This document shows positions 8,906 through 63,300 of a stretch of 64,000 bases of DNA, piece by piece; position 1 is the first letter of the stretch; every line of letters begins with the position of its first letter. The stretch is from Octopus sinensis (lineage: Eukaryota), in contig NC_043006.1 in the NCBI RefSeq assembly GCF_006345805.1, forward strand, positions 64,728,001 through 64,792,000, given 5' to 3'. Position numbers and translations under genes: made by a program. The notes under the pieces are model-generated. The model searched no databases, was not told the DNA's origin, and was given only the letters and a program-made list of their open reading frames with translations.

Positions 8906-10488
8906 ATCAAGGCCGATATAAGTAAACAACACTGATTCATCAACACGTGAAAGACCTGCTTCCGGTGGTTGTTACCGAGGGTCATAAATTATAATAGTGA
9001 GAGACAAAAGAAAGGAAGGTGTGTGCGTGTGTGAGTGAGAGAGAAAGAGAGAGAGAGAGAGAGAGATATGGCTACACAATGAAAATGTAAATTGCAAAGA
9101 AAAGGATTAGAAAATGTCCAGACAATGCAATGCTTGTTTATGCAGTGAAGAAGAACAGTTTAATGTTTCTAGTAGTGAGATGAACCTGGTTGCTGGTGTT
9201 GAACGATAAATCAATTGATTCCCAACTTATTTGTACAGCAAACATTTCATCTCTATTTATGAAAGTAGAACATCAATAGTTTCATTGGACTATGTTACAA
9301 CCAGCCGTCACGGGTGAGCGAGAATATGGCCTTCTCTTTATGTCTTAGATATCTATGTAGTCACCAGAAAACAAGACACCCTCTCGGCCTTCCTCCACTT
9401 GAATGTTATAGCTAGAGGGAGAACGGCTGTAAGAAGTTTTAGGCTAAGAAAACTGTAACCATGCATGACCAAGTTTAAGGATTGAACCAATGACAGCAAT
9501 CCATGGGTCGAATATCCCTAACCATTAAGCTATTGGTATGCCTCTAGATAAGTGCATCTCATGCCACCAACTTTGTTTCCACATAACTTTCTGAGACATG
9601 GGTAGTGGCAGTGTGGTTTGAAGCTTGCTTCCCAACCACATGGTTCCAGGTTCAGTCCCACTGAATGGGACCTTGGGCAAGTGTCTTCTACTATGCTCCC
9701 AGACCAATCAAAGTTAGTGGATTTGGTAGATAGAAACTGAAATAAGCTCGTCATGTGTATGTATGTGTGTATATATGTAAGTTTTAAAATAGAGAGATTT
9801 AATGGATGTAATTTTATTTATTAAATTATTTAACATTGCCTTCAATTGTTTCATTTTGTCAATTTATATCCATTGAATCTCTCCATTTTCAAACTTATTG
9901 ATATTTGATGTTTTATAATATATTAATTGAAGAAATATCTCTTCACAAAATAATATATTAAACCAGGGTATCTTGGATAAAACTACCCCTGTAAGAGATT
10001 TAAATATCCTCATAGTGAATATACATACACATATATATATATATATATATATATAAATGAATTTAGAGGGATATATTATCTGGGCAGACACCATATTACC
10101 TCTCAGTTAATGGCTAGCCACTTCGATCAGTACTTAACATCTGTGACTAGAATTTATTGCAAGTCAATCCCCAAATTCTTTCGATTTGTAATTCCACGTT
10201 TCACTATGTATATATGTATGTGTATGTATGTATGTATATATATATGTATATGCATATATGTGTATAAATATAGATGTTTATATATATATATGTATATGTG
10301 TGCATATATAAATATATATATATATATGTGTGTACATATATGTATATATAAACATATGTATGCATGTGTGTGTGTGTATATATATATATAGTCAGGCACA
10401 TGTATATATACACATGTATATATATATACACACGTATATATATATATATATATATACACGTATATATATATATACACATGTGTATATA

Positions 10489-10884
10489 GGTGCAAGAGTG
10501 GCTGTGTGGTAAACAGCTTGCTAACCAACTACATGGTTCCGGGTTCAGTCCCACTGCGTGGCATCTTGGGCAGGTGTCTTCTGCTATAGCCCCGGGCCGA
10601 CCAATGCTTTGTGAGCGGATTTGGTAGACGGAAACTGAAAGAAACCTGTCGTATATATGTATATATATATATGTGTGTGTGTATGTGTTTGTCCCCCTAG
10701 CATTGCTTGACAACCGATGCTGGTGTGTTTATGTCCCCGTCACTTAGCGGTTCGGCAAAAGAGACCGATAGAATAAGTACTGGGCTTACAAAGAATAAGT
10801 CCTGGGGTCGATTTGCTTGACTAAAGGCGGTGCTCCAGCATGGCCTCAGTCAAATGATTGAAACAAATAAAAGAGTAAAAGAGT
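10489..10884 (+). mobile_element. Full-length family-A SINE
   Basis: tRNA-like head, internal (TA/TG)n, tail ..aaaagagtaaaagag. Confidence 0.9.
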
Positions 10885-11366
10885 ATATACACACACATGT
10901 ATATATATATATATACACACACATGTATATATATATATATATACACGTTTATATATACGCACACACACACATATATATATACATACATGTACACAGATAT
11001 AACCACGTTTATGTATACATGTATATATGTATACATATATATATACACACGTATATATATATATATACACACACACGTATATATATATATATATATATAT
11101 TTCTTTACTACCCACAAGGGGCCAAACACAGAGGATATATATATATATATATGACAACCGATGCTGGTGTGTTTATGTCCCCGTCACTTAGCGGTTCGGC
11201 AAAAGAGACCGATAGAATAAGTACTGGGCTTACAAAGAATAAGTCCTGGGGTCGATTTGCTTGACTAAAGGCGGTGCTCCAGCATGGCCTCAGTCAAATG
11301 ATTGAAACAAATAAAAGAGTAAAAGAGTATATACACACACATGTATATATATATATATACACACAC

Positions 11367-11404
<38 letters not shown>

Positions 11405-11640
11405 TTTTATATACGCACACACACATAATATATACATACATGTACACAGATACACACACGTTTATGTATACATGTATATATATGTATACATATATGTACA
11501 CAGATATACACACACGTTTATGTATACATGTATATATATGTATACATATATATATATACACACGTATATATATATATATATATTTCTTTACTACCCACAA
11601 GGGGCCAAACACAGAGGGGATATATATATATATATATATA
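10708..11640. repeat. Tandem duplication of a ~444-bp unit (SINE 3' half + microsatellite + cut SINE-B tail)
   Basis: tgacaaccgatgctgg.. starts at 10708 and again at 11152; non-microsatellite parts appear identical. Confidence 0.9.
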
Positions 11641-11644
11641 CATA

Positions 11645-13150
11645 TATTTATTATTATTATTTATTAATTATTATTATTCTGATCCCCCTAGTCGCCACTC
11701 TGTTTACTATTTCAGCCTCGCCTCGTTTTTGCATATTCTGTATAATTCACTAGTTATCGTTATAGATATTTAAGATCTATCTCCCTTACAGGGCTGATTA
11801 GAAATTGGCTGCCGGTTCTTCCCGGGGTTTTCCCTCCCCCTCTTTTTACATTGTCTGTCTGGACTCCTCTTCCTACTCCTCGACATGGCTATGCATACTT
11901 AAGCTAGTAACCTGCCTCACTCTTGATTCCGAATTCCTTTTGCCAAGTCTGTCGGTAAACGAAGTGATCCCAAGATAAGAAATCTTTGAACTTTAATTCA
12001 TCCGTATCTCTATTTATTATTATTATTTATTAATTATTATTATTCTGATCCCCCTAGTCGCCACTCTGTTTACTATTTCAGCCTCGCCTCGTTTTTGCAT
12101 ATTCTGTATAATTCACTAGTTATCGTTATAGATATTTAAGATCTATCTCCCTTACAGGGCTGATTAGAAATTGGCTGCCGGTTCTTCGCGGCGCGCCCCC
12201 GCCCTGCCCACCCCCCCACCAATACCGGATATCTCTATTTTGCTCCAACTATACCGGATGTCGTTTCTCCCACCATTATAGGTGTCTACTCTTTGAACCC
12301 CTCTCTTCAATACGCTATTTCACCATGCATTACCCCTCTCTCGATATCCTACCTACTAGTTCTACTTGCCTAGAACCTGTCCTCTGAACCACCCCTCCCA
12401 CTGGTGCTCCCCTATATTTCTGCACCCCCACCACCATTATAGGTGTCTACTCTTTGAACCCCCCTCTTCAATACGCTATTTCAACCATGCATTACCCCTC
12501 TCTCGATATCCTACGTTCTACTTGCCTAGAACCTGTCCTCTGAACCACCCCACCCCTCCCGCTGGTGCTCCCCTATATTTCTGCACCCCCACCACCACCA
12601 TTATAGGTGTCTACTCTTTGAACCCCCCTCTTCAATACGCTATTTCACCATGCATTACCCCTCTCTCTCGATATCCTACGTTCTACTTGCCTAGAACCTG
12701 TCCTCTGAACCACCCCTCCACTGGTGCTGCTCCCTATATTTCTGCACCCCCACCACCATTATAGGTGTCTACTCTTTGAACCCCCCTCTTCAATACGCTA
12801 TTTCACCATGCATTACCCCTCTCTCGATATCCTACGTTCTACTTGCCTATTACCTGTCCTCTGAACCACCCCTCCCACTGGTGCTCCCCTATATTTCTGC
12901 ACCCCCCCATAAAAAAGCACCATCCGAACGTGGCCGATGCCAGACCCCTCTGGCACCTGTGCAGGTGGCACGTAAAAAACACCCACTACACTCGCGGAGT
13001 GGTTGGCGTTAGGAAGGGCATCCAGCTGTAGAAACACTGCCAGACTAGACTGGAGCCTGGGGCAGTCCCGAGCTCTCCAGACCCCGGTCGAAACCGTCCA
13101 ACCCGTGCTAGCGCGGAAAACGGACGTTAAACGATGATGATGATGATGAT
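11645..13150 (+). mobile_element. Composite element copy 1: ~370-bp unit x1.5, GC/G4 junction, ~160-bp VNTR x4, RTE-type tail (GAT)n
   Basis: 370-bp unit period 11681 to 12047; VNTR starts 12271, 12432, 12596, 12754; tail ..ggacgttaaacgatgatgatg; inverted homologue at 48241-49548. Confidence 0.85.
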
Positions 13151-13708
13151 ATATATATATATATACATACACGTATATATATACATGCACGTATATATAC
13201 ATATATATATATTACATACACGTATATATACATATATATATATACATACACGTATATATACACATACACGTATATACATATATATACACATACACGTATA
13301 TATATATATACACACATACACGTATATATATATATATACACATACACGTATATATATATATATATACACATACACGTATATATATATACACATACACGTA
13401 TATATATATATATATACACATACACGTATATATATATATACACATACACGTATATATATATATACACATACACGTATATATATATATATACATACACGTA
13501 TATATATATGAAAATGGCATAACCAGAGATGTGAGTGTTCGACTTTGCTGCTTTAACTTTTTAATGCATTTTTTTTCTTATGGCATGGATACGTGATAAG
13601 AAATTTGATTCCAGGTTTAGTTTCGCTGCGTGGCACCTCGAACAAGTGTCTTCTACGGTAACCTCGGGCTGACCAAATCCGTGTAAGAGGATTTGGTAGA
13701 TGAAAACT

Positions 13709-13746
<38 letters not shown>

Positions 13747-13757
13747 CTCTCTCCTCC

Positions 13758-13788
<31 letters not shown>

Positions 13789-14234
13789 ATATTATATATA
13801 TATATATATACGTGTATGTATATACGTGTATGTATATATTATATATATAATATATACGTGTATGTATATATATATATATATACGGTATGTATATATATAT
13901 ATATACACATACACGTAATATATATATATATATACATATACATACACGTATATATATATATACATATACATACACGTATATATATATAACATATACATAC
14001 ACGTATATATATATATACATATACATACACGTATATAATATATATTATATATACATACACGTATATATATATATATACATACACGTATATATATAATATA
14101 TACATACACGTATATATATATATACAACAACGTATATATATATATCATACATACACGTATATATATATATATACATACTACACGTATATATATATATATA
14201 CATACATACACGTATATATATATATATACATACA

Positions 14235-14269
<35 letters not shown>

Positions 14270-14808
14270 ATATATATATATATACATACACGTATATATA
14301 TATATATACATACACGTATATATATATATATACATACACGTATATATATATATATATACATACACGTATATATATATATATATACATACACGTATATATA
14401 TATAATACATACACGTATATATATATATATACATACACGTATATATATATATATACATACACGTATATATATATATATACATACACGTATATATATATAT
14501 ATACATACACGTATATATTATATATACATACACGTATATATATATTATACATACACGTATATATATATATATATACTCACGTATATATATATATATACAT
14601 ACACGTATATATATATACATACACGTATATATATATACATACACGTATTATATATATATACATACACGTATATATATATACATACACGTATATATATATA
14701 CATACACGTATAATATATAACATACACGTATATATATATACATACACGTATATATATATACATACACGTATATATATATACATACACGTATATATATATA
14801 CATACACG

Positions 14809-14841
<33 letters not shown>

Positions 14842-14844
14842 TAT

Positions 14845-14848
<4 letters not shown>
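13150..14848. repeat. (TATATA)nCATACACG compound microsatellite arrays, interrupted by 13508-13750
   Basis: Direct inspection; motif orientation flips near 13895. Confidence 0.95.
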
Positions 14849-14890
<42 letters not shown>

Positions 14891-15092
14891 GAGTTTTCAT
14901 CTACCAAATCCTCTTACACGGATTTGGTCAGCCCGAGGTTACCGTAGAAGACACTTGTTCGAGGTGCCACGCAGCGAAACTAAACCTGGAATCAAATTTC
15001 TTATCACGTATCCATGCCATAAGAAAAAAAATGCATTAAAAAGTTAAAGCAGCAAAGTCGAACACTCACATCTCTGGTTATGCCATTTTCAT
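13508..15092. repeat. Inverted duplication: 13508-~13895 is the reverse complement of the block ending at 15092
   Basis: atgaaaatggcataaccagag..gatgaaaactctctc (13508-13720) versus gagagttttcatc..ctctggttatgccattttcat (14880-15092), about 200 unique bp with no mismatch seen. Confidence 0.9.
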
Positions 15093-25710: not shown

Positions 25711-25937
25711 TCAAGTCATCTGGAGTCAACAATACCAACCGACTTCAATTTGACCCTTAGGTGTGTTAATTATAATTCAATCTGTTGTAAGCTTTTGGAG
25801 CAAACATCCCTACATCCTCTATTCAAGTCATCTGGAGTCAACAATACCAACCGACTTCAATTTGACCCTTAGGTGTGTTAATTAGAATTCAATCTGTTGT
25901 AAGCTTTTGGAGCAAACATCCCTACATCCTCTATTCA
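25711..25937. repeat. 112-bp tandem duplication
   Basis: tcaagtcatctggagtcaac starts at 25711 and 25823; one mismatch seen (ttataattc / ttagaattc). Confidence 0.92.
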
Positions 25938-26354
25938 ATCGCTATGTTCCCCGTAGATAAGCTGGGCAATTGCGCGTGTAAATCTCAGGCTTGTAGGAGA
26001 GGGACCTCCAAAATCTCATGGACGTTGCTCCTACACCTACCTTCCATTGTTTTCTTTATCAGGAATCTCATTTGTATATGCCTATTTAAGTACTATTTAC
26101 TTTTTTCTGGAACGCCGACCGCCAGTACTACCACACAATCAAAACGTACCCGGATATCTTCACACAAAAGATGAGTCAGCTCTACAGGGCATTAATGAGT
26201 ATTAAAGAACAAAAGAATTGTCGAACAATGCTTGGATAAATAAAGAAATCAGTTTCGAGCTATTGCAGTGTTGATTTAGCTCTATCATTTAGTCACATGC
26301 GCGCGCGTGTGTGAGTAGTAGTAGTAGTAGTAGCAGCAGCAGCAGCAGCCAGCC

Positions 26355-29559: not shown

Positions 29560-30420
29560 GGCGGCGAGCTGGCAGAAACGTTAGCATGCCGGACGAAATG
29601 CTTAGCAGTATTTCGTCTGCCGCTACGTTCTGAGTTCAAATTCCGTCGAGGTCGACTTTGCTTTTCATCCTTTCGGGGTAGATTAAATAAGTACCAGTTA
29701 CGCACTGGGTCGATGTAATCGACTTAATCCGTTTGTTTAACCCCTTGTGGGTAGTAAAGAAATAGGTATTTCGTCTGCCTTTACGTTCTGAGTTCAAATT
29801 CCGCCAAGGTCGACTTGCCTTTCATCCTTTCGGGGTAGATAAATTAAGTACCAGTTGCGTACTGGGATCGATCTAATCGACTGGCCGCTTTCCCTCAAAT
29901 TTTAGGCCTTGTGCCTAGAGTAGAAAAAATTATTTAGGTTCATTAAAGCAGCGAGCTGGCAGAAAACATTAGGACGCCAGGCGAAATGTTTAGCGGTATT
30001 TCATCGGTCTTTACGTTCCGAGTTCAAATTCCGCCGAGGTCGACTTTGCTTCTCATCCTTTCGAGATCGATAAATCAAGTACCAGTTGCGTACTGGGGTC
30101 GATGTAATCGACTACACTCCTCCCCCAAATTTCAGACTTTATGCCTTTAGCAGGAAGGATTATTTAGGTTCATTTCTAAGGCAGCAAGCTGGCAGATTTG
30201 TGAGCACGCCGGGCAAAATGCTTCGCGGCATTTCGTCCGTCCTCACGTTTTGAGTTCAAATTCTACCGAAGTCGACTTTGCCTTTCATCGATGAAATAGG
30301 TCGACGAAGCTATTTCCTTTTGAATGAAACACGTACCAGTTACGCACTGGGCCGATGTAATTGACTAGTCCCCTCACCCAAAATGTCAGGCCTTATGCCT
30401 TTAGTAGAAAAGATTATTCA
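29560..30420 (+). mobile_element. Head-to-tail cluster of family-B SINEs including a dimer
   Basis: Four repeats of the core between 29560 and 30420; dimer junction aaagaaatag|gtatttcgtct at 29765. Confidence 0.9.
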
Positions 30421-36838: not shown

Positions 36839-36844
36839 AGTCTG

Positions 36845-37160
36845 AGAGAGAAGGTGGGAGGAGAGAAAAGTGGGAGGAGAGAAAAGTGGGAGGAGAGAAC
36901 AGAGAGAGGAGAGAAAAGAGGGGGTAGAGAAAAGAGGGAGGAGAGAAAAGAGGTGGGGGAGAAAAGTGGGAGGAGAGAAAAGCGGGAGGAACGAAAAGCG
37001 GGAGAAGAGAAAAGAGGGAGAAGAGAAAAGAGGGAGAAGAGAAAAGAGGGAGAAGAGAAAAGAGGGAGGAGAGAAAAGAGGGAGGAGAGAAGAGAGGGAG
37101 AACAATTAAGATCGTGAAAGAGAATAAAATTGCAATGAAGGAAAGAGAAAAAAAAAGGAG
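36845..37160. repeat. Polypurine minisatellite (GAGAAAAGAGGGAG(G/A)A-type, ~16-bp unit)
   Basis: Direct inspection. Confidence 0.9.
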
Positions 37161-47679: not shown

Positions 47680-48225
47680 GCGCATGTGAGAACAGCTTGT
47701 AAAGAAGTGCCGATCTCTAATTTTGGAGGGAACCTGTGGTAGAAGTAGACCCAAGGAGACGTGGGATGAGGTGGTGAAGCACGAGCTTTGAACTTTGAGT
47801 CTCTCAGAGGCAATGACAAGTGACTGACATCTTTGGTGATATGCTGTGCTTGAGAAGACCTAGCAAGCCAAGCGAAATCATAGTGATGACTGATGCTGGT
47901 GGCACATGAAAAACTTTTGAGTGCTGGGTCTCATGGAGGCAATGACTGAGACCTTTGGCATTATGCTGTGCTTGAGATTGAAGACTCATCAAGCCAAGTA
48001 AAATTGCAGTCATGGCAGATACTGGTGTCACACAAATGGCACACATGCCAGTGGCACATAAAAGCACCCATTATACTCTTGGAGTGGTTGACATTAGGAA
48101 GGGCATCCAGCTGTAGAAACCACGTCAAATCAGACTGGAGTCTGGTGTAGGCTTCCAGCTTGCCAGCCCTGGTCAAACTATCCAATCCATGCCAGCATGG
48201 ACAACAGATGTTAAATGACGACAAC
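47680..48225 (+). mobile_element. RTE LINE 3' end (ORF2 C-terminus plus tail)
   Basis: KKCRSLILEGTCGRSRPKETWDEVVKHEL*TLSLSEAMTSD*HLW*YAVLEKT*; the three internal stops fall where CGA(Arg) to TGA is expected. Confidence 0.85.
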
Positions 48226-48240
48226 GATAATATATATATA

Positions 48241-49548
48241 TCATCATCATCATCATCGTTTAACGTCCATTTTCCGCGCTAGCACGGGTTGGACGGTTTC
48301 GACCGGGGTCTGGGGAGCTCGGGACTGCCCCAGGCTCCAGTCTAGTCTGGCAGTGTTTCTACAGCTGGATGCCCTTCCTAACGCTAACCACTCCAGAGGG
48401 GTCTGGCATCGGCCACGTTCGGATGGTGCTTTTTTGGGGGGGGGTGGGGGTGCAGAAATATAGGGGAGCAGCACCAGTGGGAGGGGGGTTCAGAGGTCAG
48501 GTTCTAGGCAAGTAGAACGTAGGATAGGATATCGAGGAGAGGGGGTAATGCATGGTGAAATAGCGTATTGAAGAGGGGGGTTCAAGAGTAGACACCTATA
48601 ATGGTGGTGGTGGGGGGGTGCAGAAATATAGGGGAGCACCAGTGGGAGGGGTGGTTCAGAGGACAGGTTCTAGGCAAGTAGAAGTAGGATATCGAGAGAG
48701 GGGTAATGCATGGTGTGAAATAGCGTATTGAAGAGGGGGGTTCAAAGAGTAGACACCTATAATGGTGGTGGGAGAAAGAAACGACATCCGGTATAGTTGG
48801 AGCAAAATAGAGATATCCGGTATTGGTGGGGGGGTGGGTAGGGCGGGCGCGCCGCGAAGAATCGGCAGCCAATTTCTAATCAGCCCTGTAAGGGAGATAG
48901 ATCTTAAATATCTATAACGATAACTAGTGAATTATACAGAATATGCAAAAACGAGGCGAGGCTGAAATAGTAAACAGAGTGGCGACTAGGGGAATCAGAA
49001 TAATAATAATTAATAAATAATAATAATAAATAGAGATACGGATGAATTAAAGTTCAAAGATTTCTTATCTTGGGATCACTTCGTTTACGGACAGACTTGG
49101 CAAAAGGAATTCGGAATCAAGAATGAGGCAGGTTACTAGCTTAAGTATGCATAGCCATGGTGAGGAGTAGGAAGAGAGGAGTCCAGACAGACAATGTAAA
49201 AAGAGGGGGAGAGAAGGGAAGAGAACCCCGCGAAGAATCGGCAGCCAATTTCTAATCAGCCCTGTAAGGGAGATAGATCTTAAATATCTATAACGATAAC
49301 TAGTGAATTATACAGAATATGCAAAAACGAGGCGAGGCTGAAATAGTAAACAGTGTGGCGACTAGGGGGATCAGAATAATAATAATTAATAAATAATAAT
49401 AATAAATAGAGATACGGATAAATTAAAGTTCAAAGATTTCTTATCTTGGGATCACTTCGTTTATGGACAGACTTGGCAAAAGGAATTCGGAATCAAGAAT
49501 GAGGCAGGTTACTAGCTTAAGTATGCATAGCCATGGCGAGGAGTAGGA
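48241..49548 (-). mobile_element. Composite element copy 2: RTE tail, ~160-bp VNTR x2, G4 junction, ~375-bp unit x1.8
   Basis: Reverse complement of 11645-13150; unit period 48861 to 49237; flanked by (TA)n on both sides. Confidence 0.88.
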
Positions 49549-51199: not shown

Positions 51200-51500
51200 A
51201 TATATCATCATTGTTTAACGTCTGCTTTCCATGCTGGCATGGGTTGGACAGTTTGATTGAGGACTGGCAAGCCAGGAGGTTGCACCAGGTTCCAATCTGA
51301 TCTGGCAAGCCAGGAGGTTGCACCAGGTTCCAATCTGATCTGGCAAGGTTTCTACAGATGGATACCCTTCCCAACACCAACCACTCTGAGAGTGTAGTGG
51401 GTGCTTTTTACGTGCCACCAGCATGGGGGCCAGTCAGGCAGCACTGGTAGCAACAAAGCCCGAATGGTGCTTTTTACTTGCTACTAGCATGGGACCAGTC
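51200..51500 (-). mobile_element. Family-C repeat with an internal perfect 38-bp tandem duplication
   Basis: ctggcaagccaggaggttgcaccaggttccaatctgat at 51264 and 51302. Confidence 0.85.
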
Positions 51501-60968: not shown

Positions 60969-61700
60969 AAATAAACGCATATATAGCTCACTACCATATA
61001 GGATATTCTTATAGACAAGTGGTGTACATATATATACCTACAGGTGATAAACACCAGCACACTAACAATATAAGATATTCTAAAAGACAGGTAACATACA
61101 TGTATATCTACAGTGATAAACACCAGTACAGCTCACTTACAATATATAATATTCTTATAGACAAATGATATACATGTATATCTACAGGTGATAAACATCA
61201 GCACAGCTCACAATATAGGATATTCTAAAAGACAGGTGACATACATATACATCTATAGTGATAAACACCAGTACTACTCACCTACACTATAGGATATTCT
61301 TATAGACAGATGACTGACATACATACAAACATACATAGAGATAAACACCTGCACAGCTCACCTACAATATAGGATATTCTTATAGACAGGTAGCATACAT
61401 ATTTATCTACAGTAATACGCATATATATCTACAGTGATAAATAGCAGAATAAGTCACTTGCTACAGACAAATGCCATAGATCTGTGATGATAAACAGCAG
61501 CACAGTTCACCTACAAGACAAAGCATTTCTTTCACTCTACCTCCGCAAACTGCACAGCTAATCTACTATAGTGAAACATTTCTCACATGTGACATACTTA
61601 GATCTGTAACAATATATGCTGGCATAGCTCAGTCACCTACAAGACAGAATATCTTACATGATACTAGTAGCAGCAAGCTGATCTGATGCAGCATAACGGA
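60700..61700. repeat. Degenerate ~70-80-bp minisatellite, about 12 copies
   Basis: Recurring gataaacaccagcacagctcac..ataggatattcttatagacaggt..acatatat.tctaca. Confidence 0.85.
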
Positions 61701-61984: not shown

Positions 61985-63300
61985 CACACATTGTCGTTTT
62001 CAGTTTTTACCAAATCCGTTCTCAAAGTTTTGATCAACCCAGGGCTATAGCAGAAGGCACTTATCCAATGTGCTATGCAGTGGGATGAACCCATTGGGAC
62101 TGAACCCAATACACATGATTGGGAAGCAAGCACCTTAACCACACAGCTACACCTGCACCTAGGGCCTACAAGAAGGGCCAGTGATCCAGCCCAGGGTCCA
62201 AAGAGTAAGGAGGAGTCCATGACGAGGTTCTGGAACCTCCTCACTACAAAACAATAAAAAAAAGAAGTAAAATGTAAAAAAAACTTTCCTTCACAGCTTT
62301 CTTGAATTATGAGAGAACCATTCCTTTTAGCCTGAAAATAATCTTGTTCTGTTAATCCAAATTTCTGGTGTGGCTGTGAGGTAAGAAGCTTGGTTCCCAA
62401 ACACATGGCTCCGGGTTCAGTCCCACAGAGTGGTACTATAGCCTCAGGTTGACCAAAGCCTTGTGAGTGGATTTGGTAGATGGGAACTGAAAGAAGCCTG
62501 TCATATGTGTGTGTGTTTGTGAGAGAGAGAGAAAGTGTTTGTGTTTGTCCCCCACTGCTGCTTGACAACTGGTGTTGGTGCATTTACATCCTTGTAACTT
62601 AGCAGTCCAGCAAAAAGGAACTGATAGAATCAAGTTTAAAAAGGGGAGAAAAAGTACTGCAATTGATTCATTTGACAAGATATTCTTCAAGAAAATGCCC
62701 CAGCATGGTCCTGCAACAATGTGGTTTCAGGTTAACTCCTGCTACATAGCACATTGGACAAGTGTCTTCTACTATAGCTCAGGGCTGATCAATGTATTGT
62801 GAGTGGATCTAGTAGACAGAAACTGAGTAGAAATGTGTGTGTGTGTGTGTGTGTGCATCTTTGTACTTCATCCTCATCACCTGACAAATTACATGCAGTA
62901 CGGAATTTTGTCAGTGAACAGGTTGCGGTCTCAAACTGACAAAAATATTTTGGCAAATTAAATTTAAATGTTGAAGTGAATCTAACAGTTTTTGTGTGTT
63001 TCTTAAATGGCTTATAAACACCTTCCACACTGCAATTGTTTTCGTTTCAGCACATGAGCTCAGATAAGGTCACATGCTATGCAAGTACATCTCCGTAATA
63101 TATATATATATTATAAATTTCAACTAGCACCCACTACACTCTCGGAGTGGTTGGCGTCAGGAAGAGCATCAAGCTGTAGAAACTCTGCCAGATCAGACTG
63201 GAGCCTAGTGCAGCCATCTGGCTCGCCAGTCCTCTGTCAAATCGTCCAACCCATGCCAGCATCGAAAGCGGATGTTAAATGATGATGATGATTATATATA
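61985..63300. mobile_element. Family-A SINE pieces in both orientations and a family-C repeat (63125-63290)
   Basis: Motif matches as for the other copies. Confidence 0.75.

What the first reader, a model, noticed from the sequence alone, without database searches (positions are those of the whole stretch)
11645..13150. Composite VNTR-containing retroposon (SVA-like architecture), copy 1 of 2
Seen: 5' [~370-bp unit x1.5][GC-rich junction][~160-bp VNTR x4][RTE-type tail ..gttaaac(GAT)n] 3'. The same assembly recurs inverted at 48241-49548. The copies share the VNTR-tail junction and the 3' end, but differ in 5' end point within the 370-bp unit, in VNTR number (4 vs 2), in several SNPs and by a ~44-bp deletion in the tail. 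Both sit in (TA)n. Established: a fixed 3' end with variable 5' truncation is the signature of target-primed reverse transcription, and SINEs borrow LINE tails for mobilisation. Inference: a non-autonomous composite element that uses RTE machinery to spread tandem repeats, analogous to hominid SVA. I do not recognise a described family for it.
Basis: partly seen in the sequence, partly recalled or inferred. Interest (0 to 1): 0.75.

Follow-up and report, generated by a model that had tools for sequence, protein, structure and literature searches.

The report
Octopus SINE-tailed tandem-repeat composite, two copies
Two inverted, about 97%-identical copies of a 1.3-1.5 kb unit in an octopus genome join two kinds of tandem repeat to the tail of a very common octopus SINE; it looks like a jumping element built like human SVA, but with only two copies, 35 kb apart, a local DNA duplication is not excluded.

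Summary
Copy 1 (11645-13150, +) and copy 2 (49548-48241, -) share the order: 376-bp tandem units (1.45 vs 1.85), GC-rich linker, 161-bp minisatellite (4 vs 2 units), tail ending GTTAAAC(GAT)5-6, with (TA)n on both flanks. The tail is not private. It is the 3' ~240 bp of a very abundant Octopus SINE ("SINE-A"): 45 tails in 206 kb, a fixed 3' end, staggered 5' truncations, and frequent insertion into (TA)n. An RTE partner was not shown. Both composite copies end exactly at the SINE-A terminus. Their 5' ends cut the 376-bp periodicity at different phases. Their flanks are unrelated. All of this fits target-primed reverse transcription. However, no third copy and no diverged relative of the 376- or 161-bp units was found in 142 kb of O. 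vulgaris, the rest of the window, the protein databases or the metagenome scans. TSDs cannot be read inside (TA)n. Two copies 35 kb apart is unexpected for a low-copy dispersed family. Verdict: SVA-like composite retroposon about 0.5; local (TA)n-mediated DNA duplication about 0.3; 3' ends of a longer element about 0.1. It is an analogue of SVA, not a member. Moderate interest.

The parts
11645..11678 (+). Copy 1: 5'-most partial 376-bp unit (last 34 bp, the irregular ATT-rich end of the unit), directly abutting (TA)n
   Evidence: Identical to 12011-12044 and to both copy-2 units
11679..12044 (+). Copy 1: full 376-bp-type unit (366 bp here; lacks 8 bp + 2 bp relative to copy 2)
   Evidence: MAFFT of units; K2P 0.022 to the copy-2 unit
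12045..12191 (+). Copy 1: last, partial unit (first 147 bp of the unit)
   Evidence: 99.3% identical to 11679-11825
12192..12269 (+). Copy 1: GC-rich linker
   Evidence: Shared with copy 2 (48851-48772), 4 transitions + 2 indels over unit end + linker. GC 61% and CpG o/e 1.26 were measured on 12186-12273
12270..12906 (+). Copy 1: 161-bp minisatellite, 4.0 units; units about 80-92% identical to each other (all six units of both copies)
   Evidence: TRF score 1068; unit alignment
12907..13132 (+). Copy 1: 5'-truncated SINE-A module (positions 4-227 of a 227-nt 3' consensus), with predicted terminal hairpin and GTTAAAC end
   Evidence: Aligns with 17 near-full SINE-A copies; 10% from consensus; private substitutions absent from all other tails
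13133..13150 (+). Copy 1: (GAT)6 terminal microsatellite, then (TA)n flank
49375..49548 (-). Copy 2: 5'-most partial 376-bp unit (last 174 bp), directly abutting (TA)10 at the tail of an older, unrelated tRNA-type SINE
48999..49374 (-). Copy 2: full 376-bp unit
   Evidence: TRF period 376, 98%
48852..48998 (-). Copy 2: last partial unit (147 bp)
48772..48851 (-). Copy 2: GC-rich linker
48446..48771 (-). Copy 2: 161-bp minisatellite, 2.0 units. The first unit differs from copy-1 unit 1 by 1 substitution in 154 aligned bases plus 3 indels; the second is about 7% from copy-1 unit 4
   Evidence: TRF
48258..48445 (-). Copy 2: SINE-A module with a 44-bp internal deletion; carries the same private substitutions as copy 1
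48241..48257 (-). Copy 2: (GAT)5GA terminal microsatellite, then (TA)5, then the tail of an older SINE-A in the opposite orientation (48037-48235, +)

Best explanation
The two loci are copies of a composite, non-autonomous non-LTR retroposon of an Octopus genome. Its RNA reads 5'-[376-bp monomers in tandem]-[GC-rich linker]-[161-bp minisatellite]-[3' two-thirds of SINE-A]-(GAU)n-3'. Shown: the module order; the identity of the 3' module with an abundant SINE; the coincidence of both 3' ends with that SINE's own terminus; different 5' end points; unrelated flanks; (TA)n at all four junctions. Inferred: a 5'-truncated SINE-A became joined to a tandem-repeat-bearing sequence. Transcripts starting upstream must be made by RNA polymerase II, because the sense strand has six T4-5 runs that would stop polymerase III. 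These transcripts carry the SINE-A 3' stem-loop and (GAU)n. The reverse transcriptase of SINE-A's LINE partner (unknown; RTE is plausible) recognises that end. Target-primed reverse transcription at a nick in a (TA)n tract then copies the RNA from the fixed 3' end, stopping or switching at variable 5' points. The minisatellite changes unit number by slippage. The 376-bp monomers may serve as an internal promoter, as tandem monomers do in mouse L1 (speculative).
For: (1) The 3' module aligns over about 224 bp with 17 near-full SINE-A copies and ends at the same GTTAAAyGAT(GAT)n. (2) SINE-A itself behaves as a TPRT element here. There are 45 tails in 206 kb with one 3' terminus and 5' truncation points scattered along the consensus, at 197, 189, 188, 110, 104, 95, 90 ... 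12. Truncated copies have (TA)n-containing TSD-like flanks: window 63121-63290, L001 ~11540, L003 363-566. About a quarter of tails run straight into (TA)n, against about 3% tract coverage. The composite has the same terminus and the same kind of site. (3) In both copies the 376-bp periodicity is cut at the very 5' end, at different phases, directly against (TA)n. This is expected if both are truncations of a longer array, and is a coincidence if either were the original locus. (4) There is no homology between the flanks of the two copies. Copy 2 lies between the TA-rich tails of two older SINEs. (5) The SINE module does not look like a copy decaying in place. Of 14 consensus CpGs, 0 were lost as TG/CA (2-8 in the 17 other copies) and 6 CpGs are new. 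Only 1 of 40 predicted pairs is broken against 4.2 expected (P about 0.03), with an A:U to G:C double change in the terminal hairpin. (6) No TIRs or inverted repeats.
Against: Only two copies are known, and they lie 35 kb apart. For a low-copy dispersed family, a neighbour within 37 kb has probability about N x 2.7e-5 (assuming a genome of about 2.7 Gb). No third copy, no short 5'-truncated derivative carrying the composite's diagnostic substitutions (0 of 43 other tails), and no diverged relative of the 376- or 161-bp units was found in 142 kb of O. vulgaris plus the window. TSDs cannot be distinguished from the microsatellite. Both copies have the same (GAT) count while SINE-A copies vary from 2 to 8, which fits a DNA copy better. 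The structure-conservation statistic is weak: several ordinary copies reach P 0.06-0.1. It could also reflect the SINE subfamily's history before it joined the repeats. The LINE partner was not identified.
Confidence: 0.5

Rival explanations
1. Local DNA-level duplication. A single old locus (tandem repeats next to a 5'-truncated SINE-A insertion) was copied once, in inverted orientation, to a site 35 kb away. The mechanism would be replication template switching or ectopic repair between self-complementary (TA)n tracts. No RNA intermediate and no family.
For: Two copies only, 35 kb apart, inverted. None in 142 kb elsewhere. All four boundaries lie in (TA)n/AT-rich sequence, which is palindromic and breakage-prone. 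The (GAT)5GA(TA)n ends are identical. Copy 1 is a simple subset of copy 2 at the 5' side, 140 bp shorter. The window is dense in (TA)n, 1.6 tracts per kb.
Against: It needs the longer copy (copy 2) to be the original locus. Yet its tandem array also starts mid-unit exactly at a (TA)n boundary between two older SINE tails, like an insertion. The 3' boundary coincides with the SINE terminus in both copies. Copy 1 has more minisatellite units (4) than its supposed parent (2). The same junction pattern is produced routinely by SINE-A retroposition in this genome.
Confidence: 0.3
2. Both loci are 5'-truncated 3' ends of a longer element, possibly the autonomous LINE partner. Its 3' UTR would contain the 376-bp and 161-bp repeats, and SINE-A would have taken its body and tail from that UTR's last ~240 bp.
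For: Heavy 5' truncation is the rule for this tail family. LINE-derived SINE bodies are documented (PMC5786205). Octopus RTE-2_OV has a long, repeat-filled 3' UTR (PMC9115989). The module is 10% from the SINE-A consensus, with private changes.
Against: No ORF or RT fragment is associated. No other truncated copy carries the diagnostic substitutions among 43 tails. The homology starts inside one of SINE-A's own ~65-nt subrepeats, which looks like a truncated SINE rather than a donor.
Confidence: 0.1
3. Assembly artefact: one copy is a misplaced or duplicated patch.
For: Repeat-rich, microsatellite-flanked sequence is error-prone. Several differences are homopolymer-length changes.
Against: The copies differ by about 2-3% substitutions, a 44-bp deletion, two minisatellite units and 140 bp at the 5' end. 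They are embedded in different unique or older-SINE flanks.
Confidence: 0.04

Closest known systems
SVA and the other hominoid VNTR-composite retrotransposons (LAVA, PVA, FVA)
   Same: Non-autonomous. Modules of unrelated origin in a fixed order. A central GC-rich VNTR whose unit number differs between copies. A 3' module taken from another retroelement that supplies the end used for mobilisation. Variable 5' ends. T-runs that exclude polymerase III. 1-2 kb size.
   Different: No sequence relationship. The 3' end is a SINE stem-loop plus (GAT)n, not AATAAA plus poly(A), so the presumed driver is a tail-specific LINE rather than L1. The 5' domain is a 376-bp tandem monomer, not (CCCTCT)n plus Alu-like. 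The minisatellite unit is 161 bp, versus my recollection of 35-50 bp in SVA (not checked here). Only two copies are known. PMC4432496 and PMC7353768 describe this class as specific to hominoid primates.
The abundant Octopus SINE with GTTAAAyGAT(GAT)n tail (called SINE-A here; its published name, if any, was not determined)
   Same: The last ~240 bp of the composite is about 90% identical to its consensus. Same terminal hairpin, same terminus, same (TA)n insertion context.
   Different: The composite lacks the SINE's 5' part (at least 60-140 bp). It carries 12+ private substitutions seen in no other copy and has about 1.1-1.3 kb of unrelated tandem-repeat sequence upstream.
Mouse L1 5' monomers; molluscan 'LP-SINEs' with LINE-derived polymerase II promoters (PMC4758252)
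   Same: Tandem ~200-400-bp monomers at the 5' end, with the outermost monomer truncated at variable positions. Non-autonomous elements that need a polymerase II promoter.
   Different: Promoter activity of the 376-bp unit is untested. It has no similarity to any LINE 5' UTR available here.
5'-transduction / read-in retrocopies of SINE- or LINE-tailed transcripts
   Same: Upstream genomic sequence is carried along because the transcript ends in a recognisable retroelement tail.
   Different: A one-off transduction would not be expected to land 35 kb from its source, and would not show both copies as truncations of a longer array.

Membership tests
SVA-type VNTR composite retrotransposon (hominoid) | Composite of unrelated modules with a central VNTR that varies between copies | tested here: met
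   Module map and 4 vs 2 units of 161 bp
SVA-type VNTR composite retrotransposon (hominoid) | 5' (CCCTCT)n + Alu-like region; 3' SINE-R; AATAAA + poly(A); L1-type mobilisation | tested here: not met
   None of these sequences is present. No AATAAA/ATTAAA; the end is (GAT)n. It is an analogue, not a member
SVA-type VNTR composite retrotransposon (hominoid) | Many dispersed copies with TSDs | tested here: inconclusive
   Two copies in the window, none in 142 kb of O. vulgaris. TSDs are masked by (TA)n. No whole octopus genome was searchable
Octopus SINE-A (GTTAAAyGAT(GAT)n-tailed SINE) | Sequence identity over body and tail, same 3' terminus | tested here: met
   224 bp aligned, 10% from consensus, same terminus. 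This holds for the 3' module only
Octopus SINE-A (GTTAAAyGAT(GAT)n-tailed SINE) | SINE head / 5' region present | tested here: not met
   Homology starts at consensus position 4 of the 3' 227 nt. Standalone copies extend at least 60-140 bp further
RTE-mobilised short retroposon | 3' tail shared with an RTE-clade LINE of the same genome | not testable with these tools
   No LINE or RT in the window or in the 7 loci. A microsatellite tail is compatible with RTE but not specific to it
TPRT-inserted retroposon in general | Fixed 3' end, variable 5' end, unrelated flanks | tested here: met
   (n = 2 only)
TPRT-inserted retroposon in general | Target-site duplications | tested here: inconclusive
   Candidate TSDs are (TA)n(CATA) for copy 1 and (TA)5-10 for copy 2. 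These cannot be told apart from the microsatellite
Segmental / inverted duplication | Homology continuing into flanking unique sequence | tested here: not met
   Homology stops at the element ends. A duplication bounded by (TA)n is not excluded
Helitron / TIR DNA transposon carrying tandem repeats | Fixed termini (TC...CTRR with 3' hairpin) or terminal inverted repeats | tested here: not met
   No inverted repeats of 12 bp or more. The ends are CCTACTCC/TTTATTATT at 5' and GATGATGA at 3'; one end differs between the copies
Satellite DNA | Long homogeneous arrays | tested here: not met
   Arrays of 1.5-1.9 and 2-4 units embedded in an interspersed unit

The most novel reading that the evidence does not exclude
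This is a living or recently active family of VNTR-composite retrotransposons in octopus. It would be the first SVA-like element outside hominoid primates, assembled independently from tandem 376-bp promoter-like monomers, a 161-bp minisatellite and a borrowed SINE tail. It would be driven by a tail-specific (RTE-like) LINE into (TA)n microsatellites, spreading minisatellites around the genome.
Probability: 0.3. Interest if true: 0.65.

Novelty: new variant of a known kind. Interest (0 to 1): 0.42.

Why it matters
The papers I read (PMC4432496, PMC7353768) describe VNTR-composite retrotransposons as specific to hominoids. An independent invention in a cephalopod, using a stringent tail-recognising LINE instead of L1, would show that this architecture is a recurrent solution. 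It would also give a route by which minisatellites and CpG-rich sequence are dispersed in octopus genomes, where SINE and LINE activity is already debated in relation to the nervous system. If it is only a local duplication, it is an ordinary structural variant in a microsatellite-rich region.

Tried and rejected
1. Protein-database search to find other copies through spurious ORFs. The VNTR sense ORF and a 1241-aa concatenate of all open frames of the 376-bp unit, linker and VNTR on both strands gave no hits. Only the antisense SINE-tail ORF hit, giving 7 O. vulgaris 'hypothetical' proteins that are plain SINE-A copies.

2. Exact-pattern scans. Metagenome contigs were scanned with a VNTR 27-mer and a unit 32-mer. 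Viral contigs were scanned with the VNTR 27-mer and the SINE core. Prokaryote genomes were scanned with the SINE core. All gave 0 hits, so these collections hold no octopus DNA.

3. Rfam (gathering and E-value modes) and ARAGORN found no tRNA or known RNA. The only hits were spurious miRNA matches in (TA)n.

4. Exact look-up of 8 window ORFs to identify the assembly: none is in the collection.

5. Search for a LINE partner. There are no long ORFs in the window. Of the three large ORFs tested in the fetched loci, two are C2H2 zinc-finger genes and the third (L004, 842 aa) has no Pfam match.

6. Empty-site reconstruction from the 444-486-bp tandem duplication upstream of copy 1: the expected continuation is not present downstream.

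7. MFE-based test of tail structure conservation: not significant, P 0.36 and 0.15. The pair-count test is only marginal.

8. 'Concerted evolution' of the 376-bp units within each copy: on inspection only one site supports it, so the claim was dropped.

9. Low-stringency blastn and nhmmer for an origin of the 376- and 161-bp units: only CT-rich low-complexity matches.

10. Literature search for a described octopus composite, satellite or SVA-like element: none found. The 2026 O. vulgaris repeat annotation lists 893 unclassified 'recently active' SINE families without describing them.

Full report
OBSERVATION. The described structure is present at the stated coordinates. Copy 1 is on the + strand at 11645-13150 (1506 bp). 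It reads as follows:
- 34 bp, the ATT-rich end of a 376-bp-type unit;
- one full unit (366 bp here);
- the first 147 bp of another unit;
- a GC-rich linker (12192-12269; the stretch 12186-12273 has 61% GC and CpG o/e 1.26);
- four 158-168-bp units of a minisatellite (12270-12906; TRF period 161, 4.0 copies, 92% matches);
- a ~226-bp tail ending GGACGTTAAAC, followed by (GAT)6.

Copy 2 is on the - strand at 49548-48241 (1308 bp) and has the same order. It has 174 + 376 + 147 bp of the unit (TRF 1.9 copies, 98%), the same linker, two minisatellite units, and the same tail with a 44-bp internal deletion. Outside the minisatellite the copies differ by K2P 0.018-0.029 plus a few indels. Units within one copy differ by 0.7-1.7%. 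All four junctions abut (TA)n. This pair is the only >93%-identical repeat longer than 300 bp in the window. Everything else repeated is 80-90%-identical SINE copies.

WHAT THE TAIL IS. The tail is not peculiar to the composite. Blastn finds at least 9 other copies in the window, and they align over the whole ~224 bp. The antisense ORF through the tail hits only 'Hypothetical predicted protein [Octopus vulgaris]' entries. So the window comes from an Octopus genome. The species was not determined: exact look-ups of window ORFs failed. I fetched seven 20-kb O. vulgaris loci around those entries (142.6 kb). Window plus loci contain 45 recognisable tails, about one per 4.6 kb. I call the family SINE-A.

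SINE-A HAS THE RETROPOSON SIGNATURE IN THIS GENOME.
- It has one 3' terminus, GTTAAAyGAT(GAT)2-8.
- Its 5' truncation points are scattered along the consensus.
- Truncated copies have TSD-like (TA)n-containing flanks: window 63121-63290, L001 ~11540, L003 363-566.
- About a quarter of tails run directly into (TA)n, although (TA) tracts of 6 or more repeats cover only about 3% of the sequence.
- Tail-to-tail SINE-A pairs separated by a short TA tract occur twice (48235/48241 in the window; L003 ~10111).

THE COMPOSITE'S SINE MODULE. It begins inside one of SINE-A's ~65-nt subrepeats and lacks at least 60-140 bp of the SINE's 5' part. No LINE or RT is present in the window or the loci. The literature shows only that RTE-BovB, CR1, Dong-R4 and L1-Tx1 are the active or abundant octopus LINEs, and that RTE-2_OV has a microsatellite-rich 3' UTR (PMC13282606, PMC8967140, PMC9115989).

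The module is 10% from the SINE-A consensus, within the range of ordinary copies (5-17%). But its differences are unusual.
- At least 12 substitutions are shared by both composite copies and by none of the other tails.
- None of the 14 consensus CpGs has decayed to TG/CA, against 2-8 in the 17 other near-full copies. Six CpGs are new.
- Under the consensus MFE fold, only 1 of 40 pairs is broken where 4.2 are expected (P about 0.03). The inner stem of the terminal hairpin carries an A:U to G:C double change plus a U:A to U:G change.

The control on ordinary copies shows this statistic is only marginal, and an MFE test is not significant. So this is weak evidence that the tail evolved under constraint. 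That constraint could have acted within a rare SINE subfamily before the tail joined the repeats.

THE UPSTREAM MODULES. The 376-bp unit, the linker and the 161-bp unit have no detectable relative anywhere else in the 206 kb, even at low stringency. They match no Rfam family or tRNA. They have no ORF with homologues. The sense strand has six T4-5 runs and no AATAAA. A full-length transcript would therefore have to be made by polymerase II and would not be polyadenylated in the usual way. There are no terminal or internal inverted repeats.

The 376-bp units were almost identical to each other when the two copies separated: within-copy divergence is no greater than between-copy divergence. The minisatellite units are about 8-20% apart, so that array is older. 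Using the calibration in PMC13282606 (Jukes-Cantor 0.065 about 18 My), the two copies separated very roughly 2.5-4 My ago. This is an inference and assumes the same rate applies in this species.

HOW THE TWO COPIES AROSE. In favour of RNA-mediated copying (target-primed reverse transcription using the SINE-A tail):
- Both copies end exactly at the SINE-A terminus.
- Their flanks are unrelated.
- Both sit in the kind of site that bona fide SINE-A insertions use.
- In both, the 376-bp periodicity is cut off at the very 5' end, at different phases, directly against (TA)n. This is what truncation of a longer array predicts. It makes it unlikely that either copy is the original locus.
- Copy 2 lies between the TA-rich tails of two older SINEs, like an insertion.

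Against it:
- There are only two copies, and they lie 35 kb apart.
- In 142 kb of O. vulgaris and the rest of the window there is no third copy. None of 43 other tails carries the diagnostic substitutions, although about half of SINE-A copies are truncated to under 227 nt. There is no older relative.
- If the family were low-copy, as most 'recently active' octopus SINE families are (893 families, 4510 insertions; PMC13282606), two independent insertions within 37 kb would be very improbable. That assumes a genome of about 2.7 Gb.
- The identical (GAT) count at both ends also fits a DNA copy better.

A local inverted duplication mediated by the self-complementary (TA)n tracts therefore remains a serious rival. 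It is weakened by the insertion-like context of the longer copy and by copy 1 having more minisatellite units. A third reading is that both are 5'-truncated 3' ends of a longer element from which SINE-A took its body. It is possible but has no positive support. An assembly artefact is unlikely given the many differences and the distinct flanks. My estimates: retroposed composite 0.5, local DNA duplication 0.3, end of a longer element 0.1, artefact 0.04.

COMPARISON WITH KNOWN ELEMENTS. Functionally the closest analogue is the SVA/LAVA/PVA/FVA class: modules of unrelated origin, a central GC-rich VNTR that varies between copies, a borrowed 3' retroelement end, and non-autonomy. It is not a member. 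There is no sequence relationship, no hexamer or Alu-like region, and no AATAAA or poly(A). The presumed driver is a tail-specific LINE, not L1. The 5' tandem monomers recall mouse L1 promoter monomers and molluscan LP-SINEs (PMC4758252), but promoter activity is untested. I found no description of such an element in cephalopods. The papers I read (PMC4432496, PMC7353768) describe VNTR composites as specific to hominoids.

VERDICT. If it is real as a family, this is a new variant of a known kind: an independently assembled SVA-like composite. If not, it is an ordinary local duplication. The decisive test is a genome-wide search for the 376- and 161-bp units in octopus assemblies.

Noticed in passing
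window 48037-48262; L003 ~10090-10140: Tail-to-tail pairs of SINE-A copies in opposite orientation, separated only by about 10-30 bp of TA-rich microsatellite. With the roughly 10-fold excess of (TA)n directly after SINE-A tails, this suggests that the partner LINE targets (TA)n, often at the ends of earlier insertions.
   Followed up: partly
L001 3699-4596 (O. vulgaris OX597840.1): Six to seven head-to-tail repeats, period 137 bp, of the 3' half of SINE-A including its (GAT)n tail: a SINE-derived tandem array.
   Followed up: no
window 12907-13132 and 48258-48445: The composite's SINE module has lost none of 14 consensus CpGs by TG/CA decay and has gained six. Ordinary SINE-A copies lost 2-8. 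The linker is also CpG-rich (o/e 1.26). This may indicate a germline-unmethylated, CpG-island-like state.
   Followed up: partly
window 10708-11637: Tandem duplication (period 444-486 bp, 88% identity) of a block made of the second half of a tRNA/CORE-type SINE, a TA/CA microsatellite and the motif TTTCTTTACTACCCACAAGGGGCCAAACACAGAGG. Copy 1 of the composite starts where a third repeat would begin.
   Followed up: partly
window 29765-30289: A 230-bp unit repeated 2.3 times (80% matches). By eye the unit resembles a tRNA-derived, Deu-core-like SINE (GAGTTCAAATTCCGCCGAGGTCGAC...TTTGCCTTTCATCCTTTCG); this is my recollection of the motif, not a database match. Another SINE arranged in tandem.
   Followed up: no
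window 13150-15092: Nearly 2 kb of imperfect (TA)n/(TATACACG)n microsatellite, self-complementary over 1.6 kb (13508-15092 matches its own reverse complement at 83%). This is a potential cruciform or fragile site immediately 3' of copy 1.
   Followed up: no
window 25711-25938; 51264-51347; 60985-61417; 36844-37100: Other tandem repeats: 112 bp x2 at 99%; 38 bp x2.2 at 100% inside a SINE-A copy; 74/145-bp units x3-6; (GAGAGAAAAGAGGGAG)16.
   Followed up: no
L007 8118-9785 and 15090-17225: Two intronless C2H2 zinc-finger genes (555 and 711 aa, 13-19 fingers) next to SINE-A copies in O. vulgaris.
   Followed up: no
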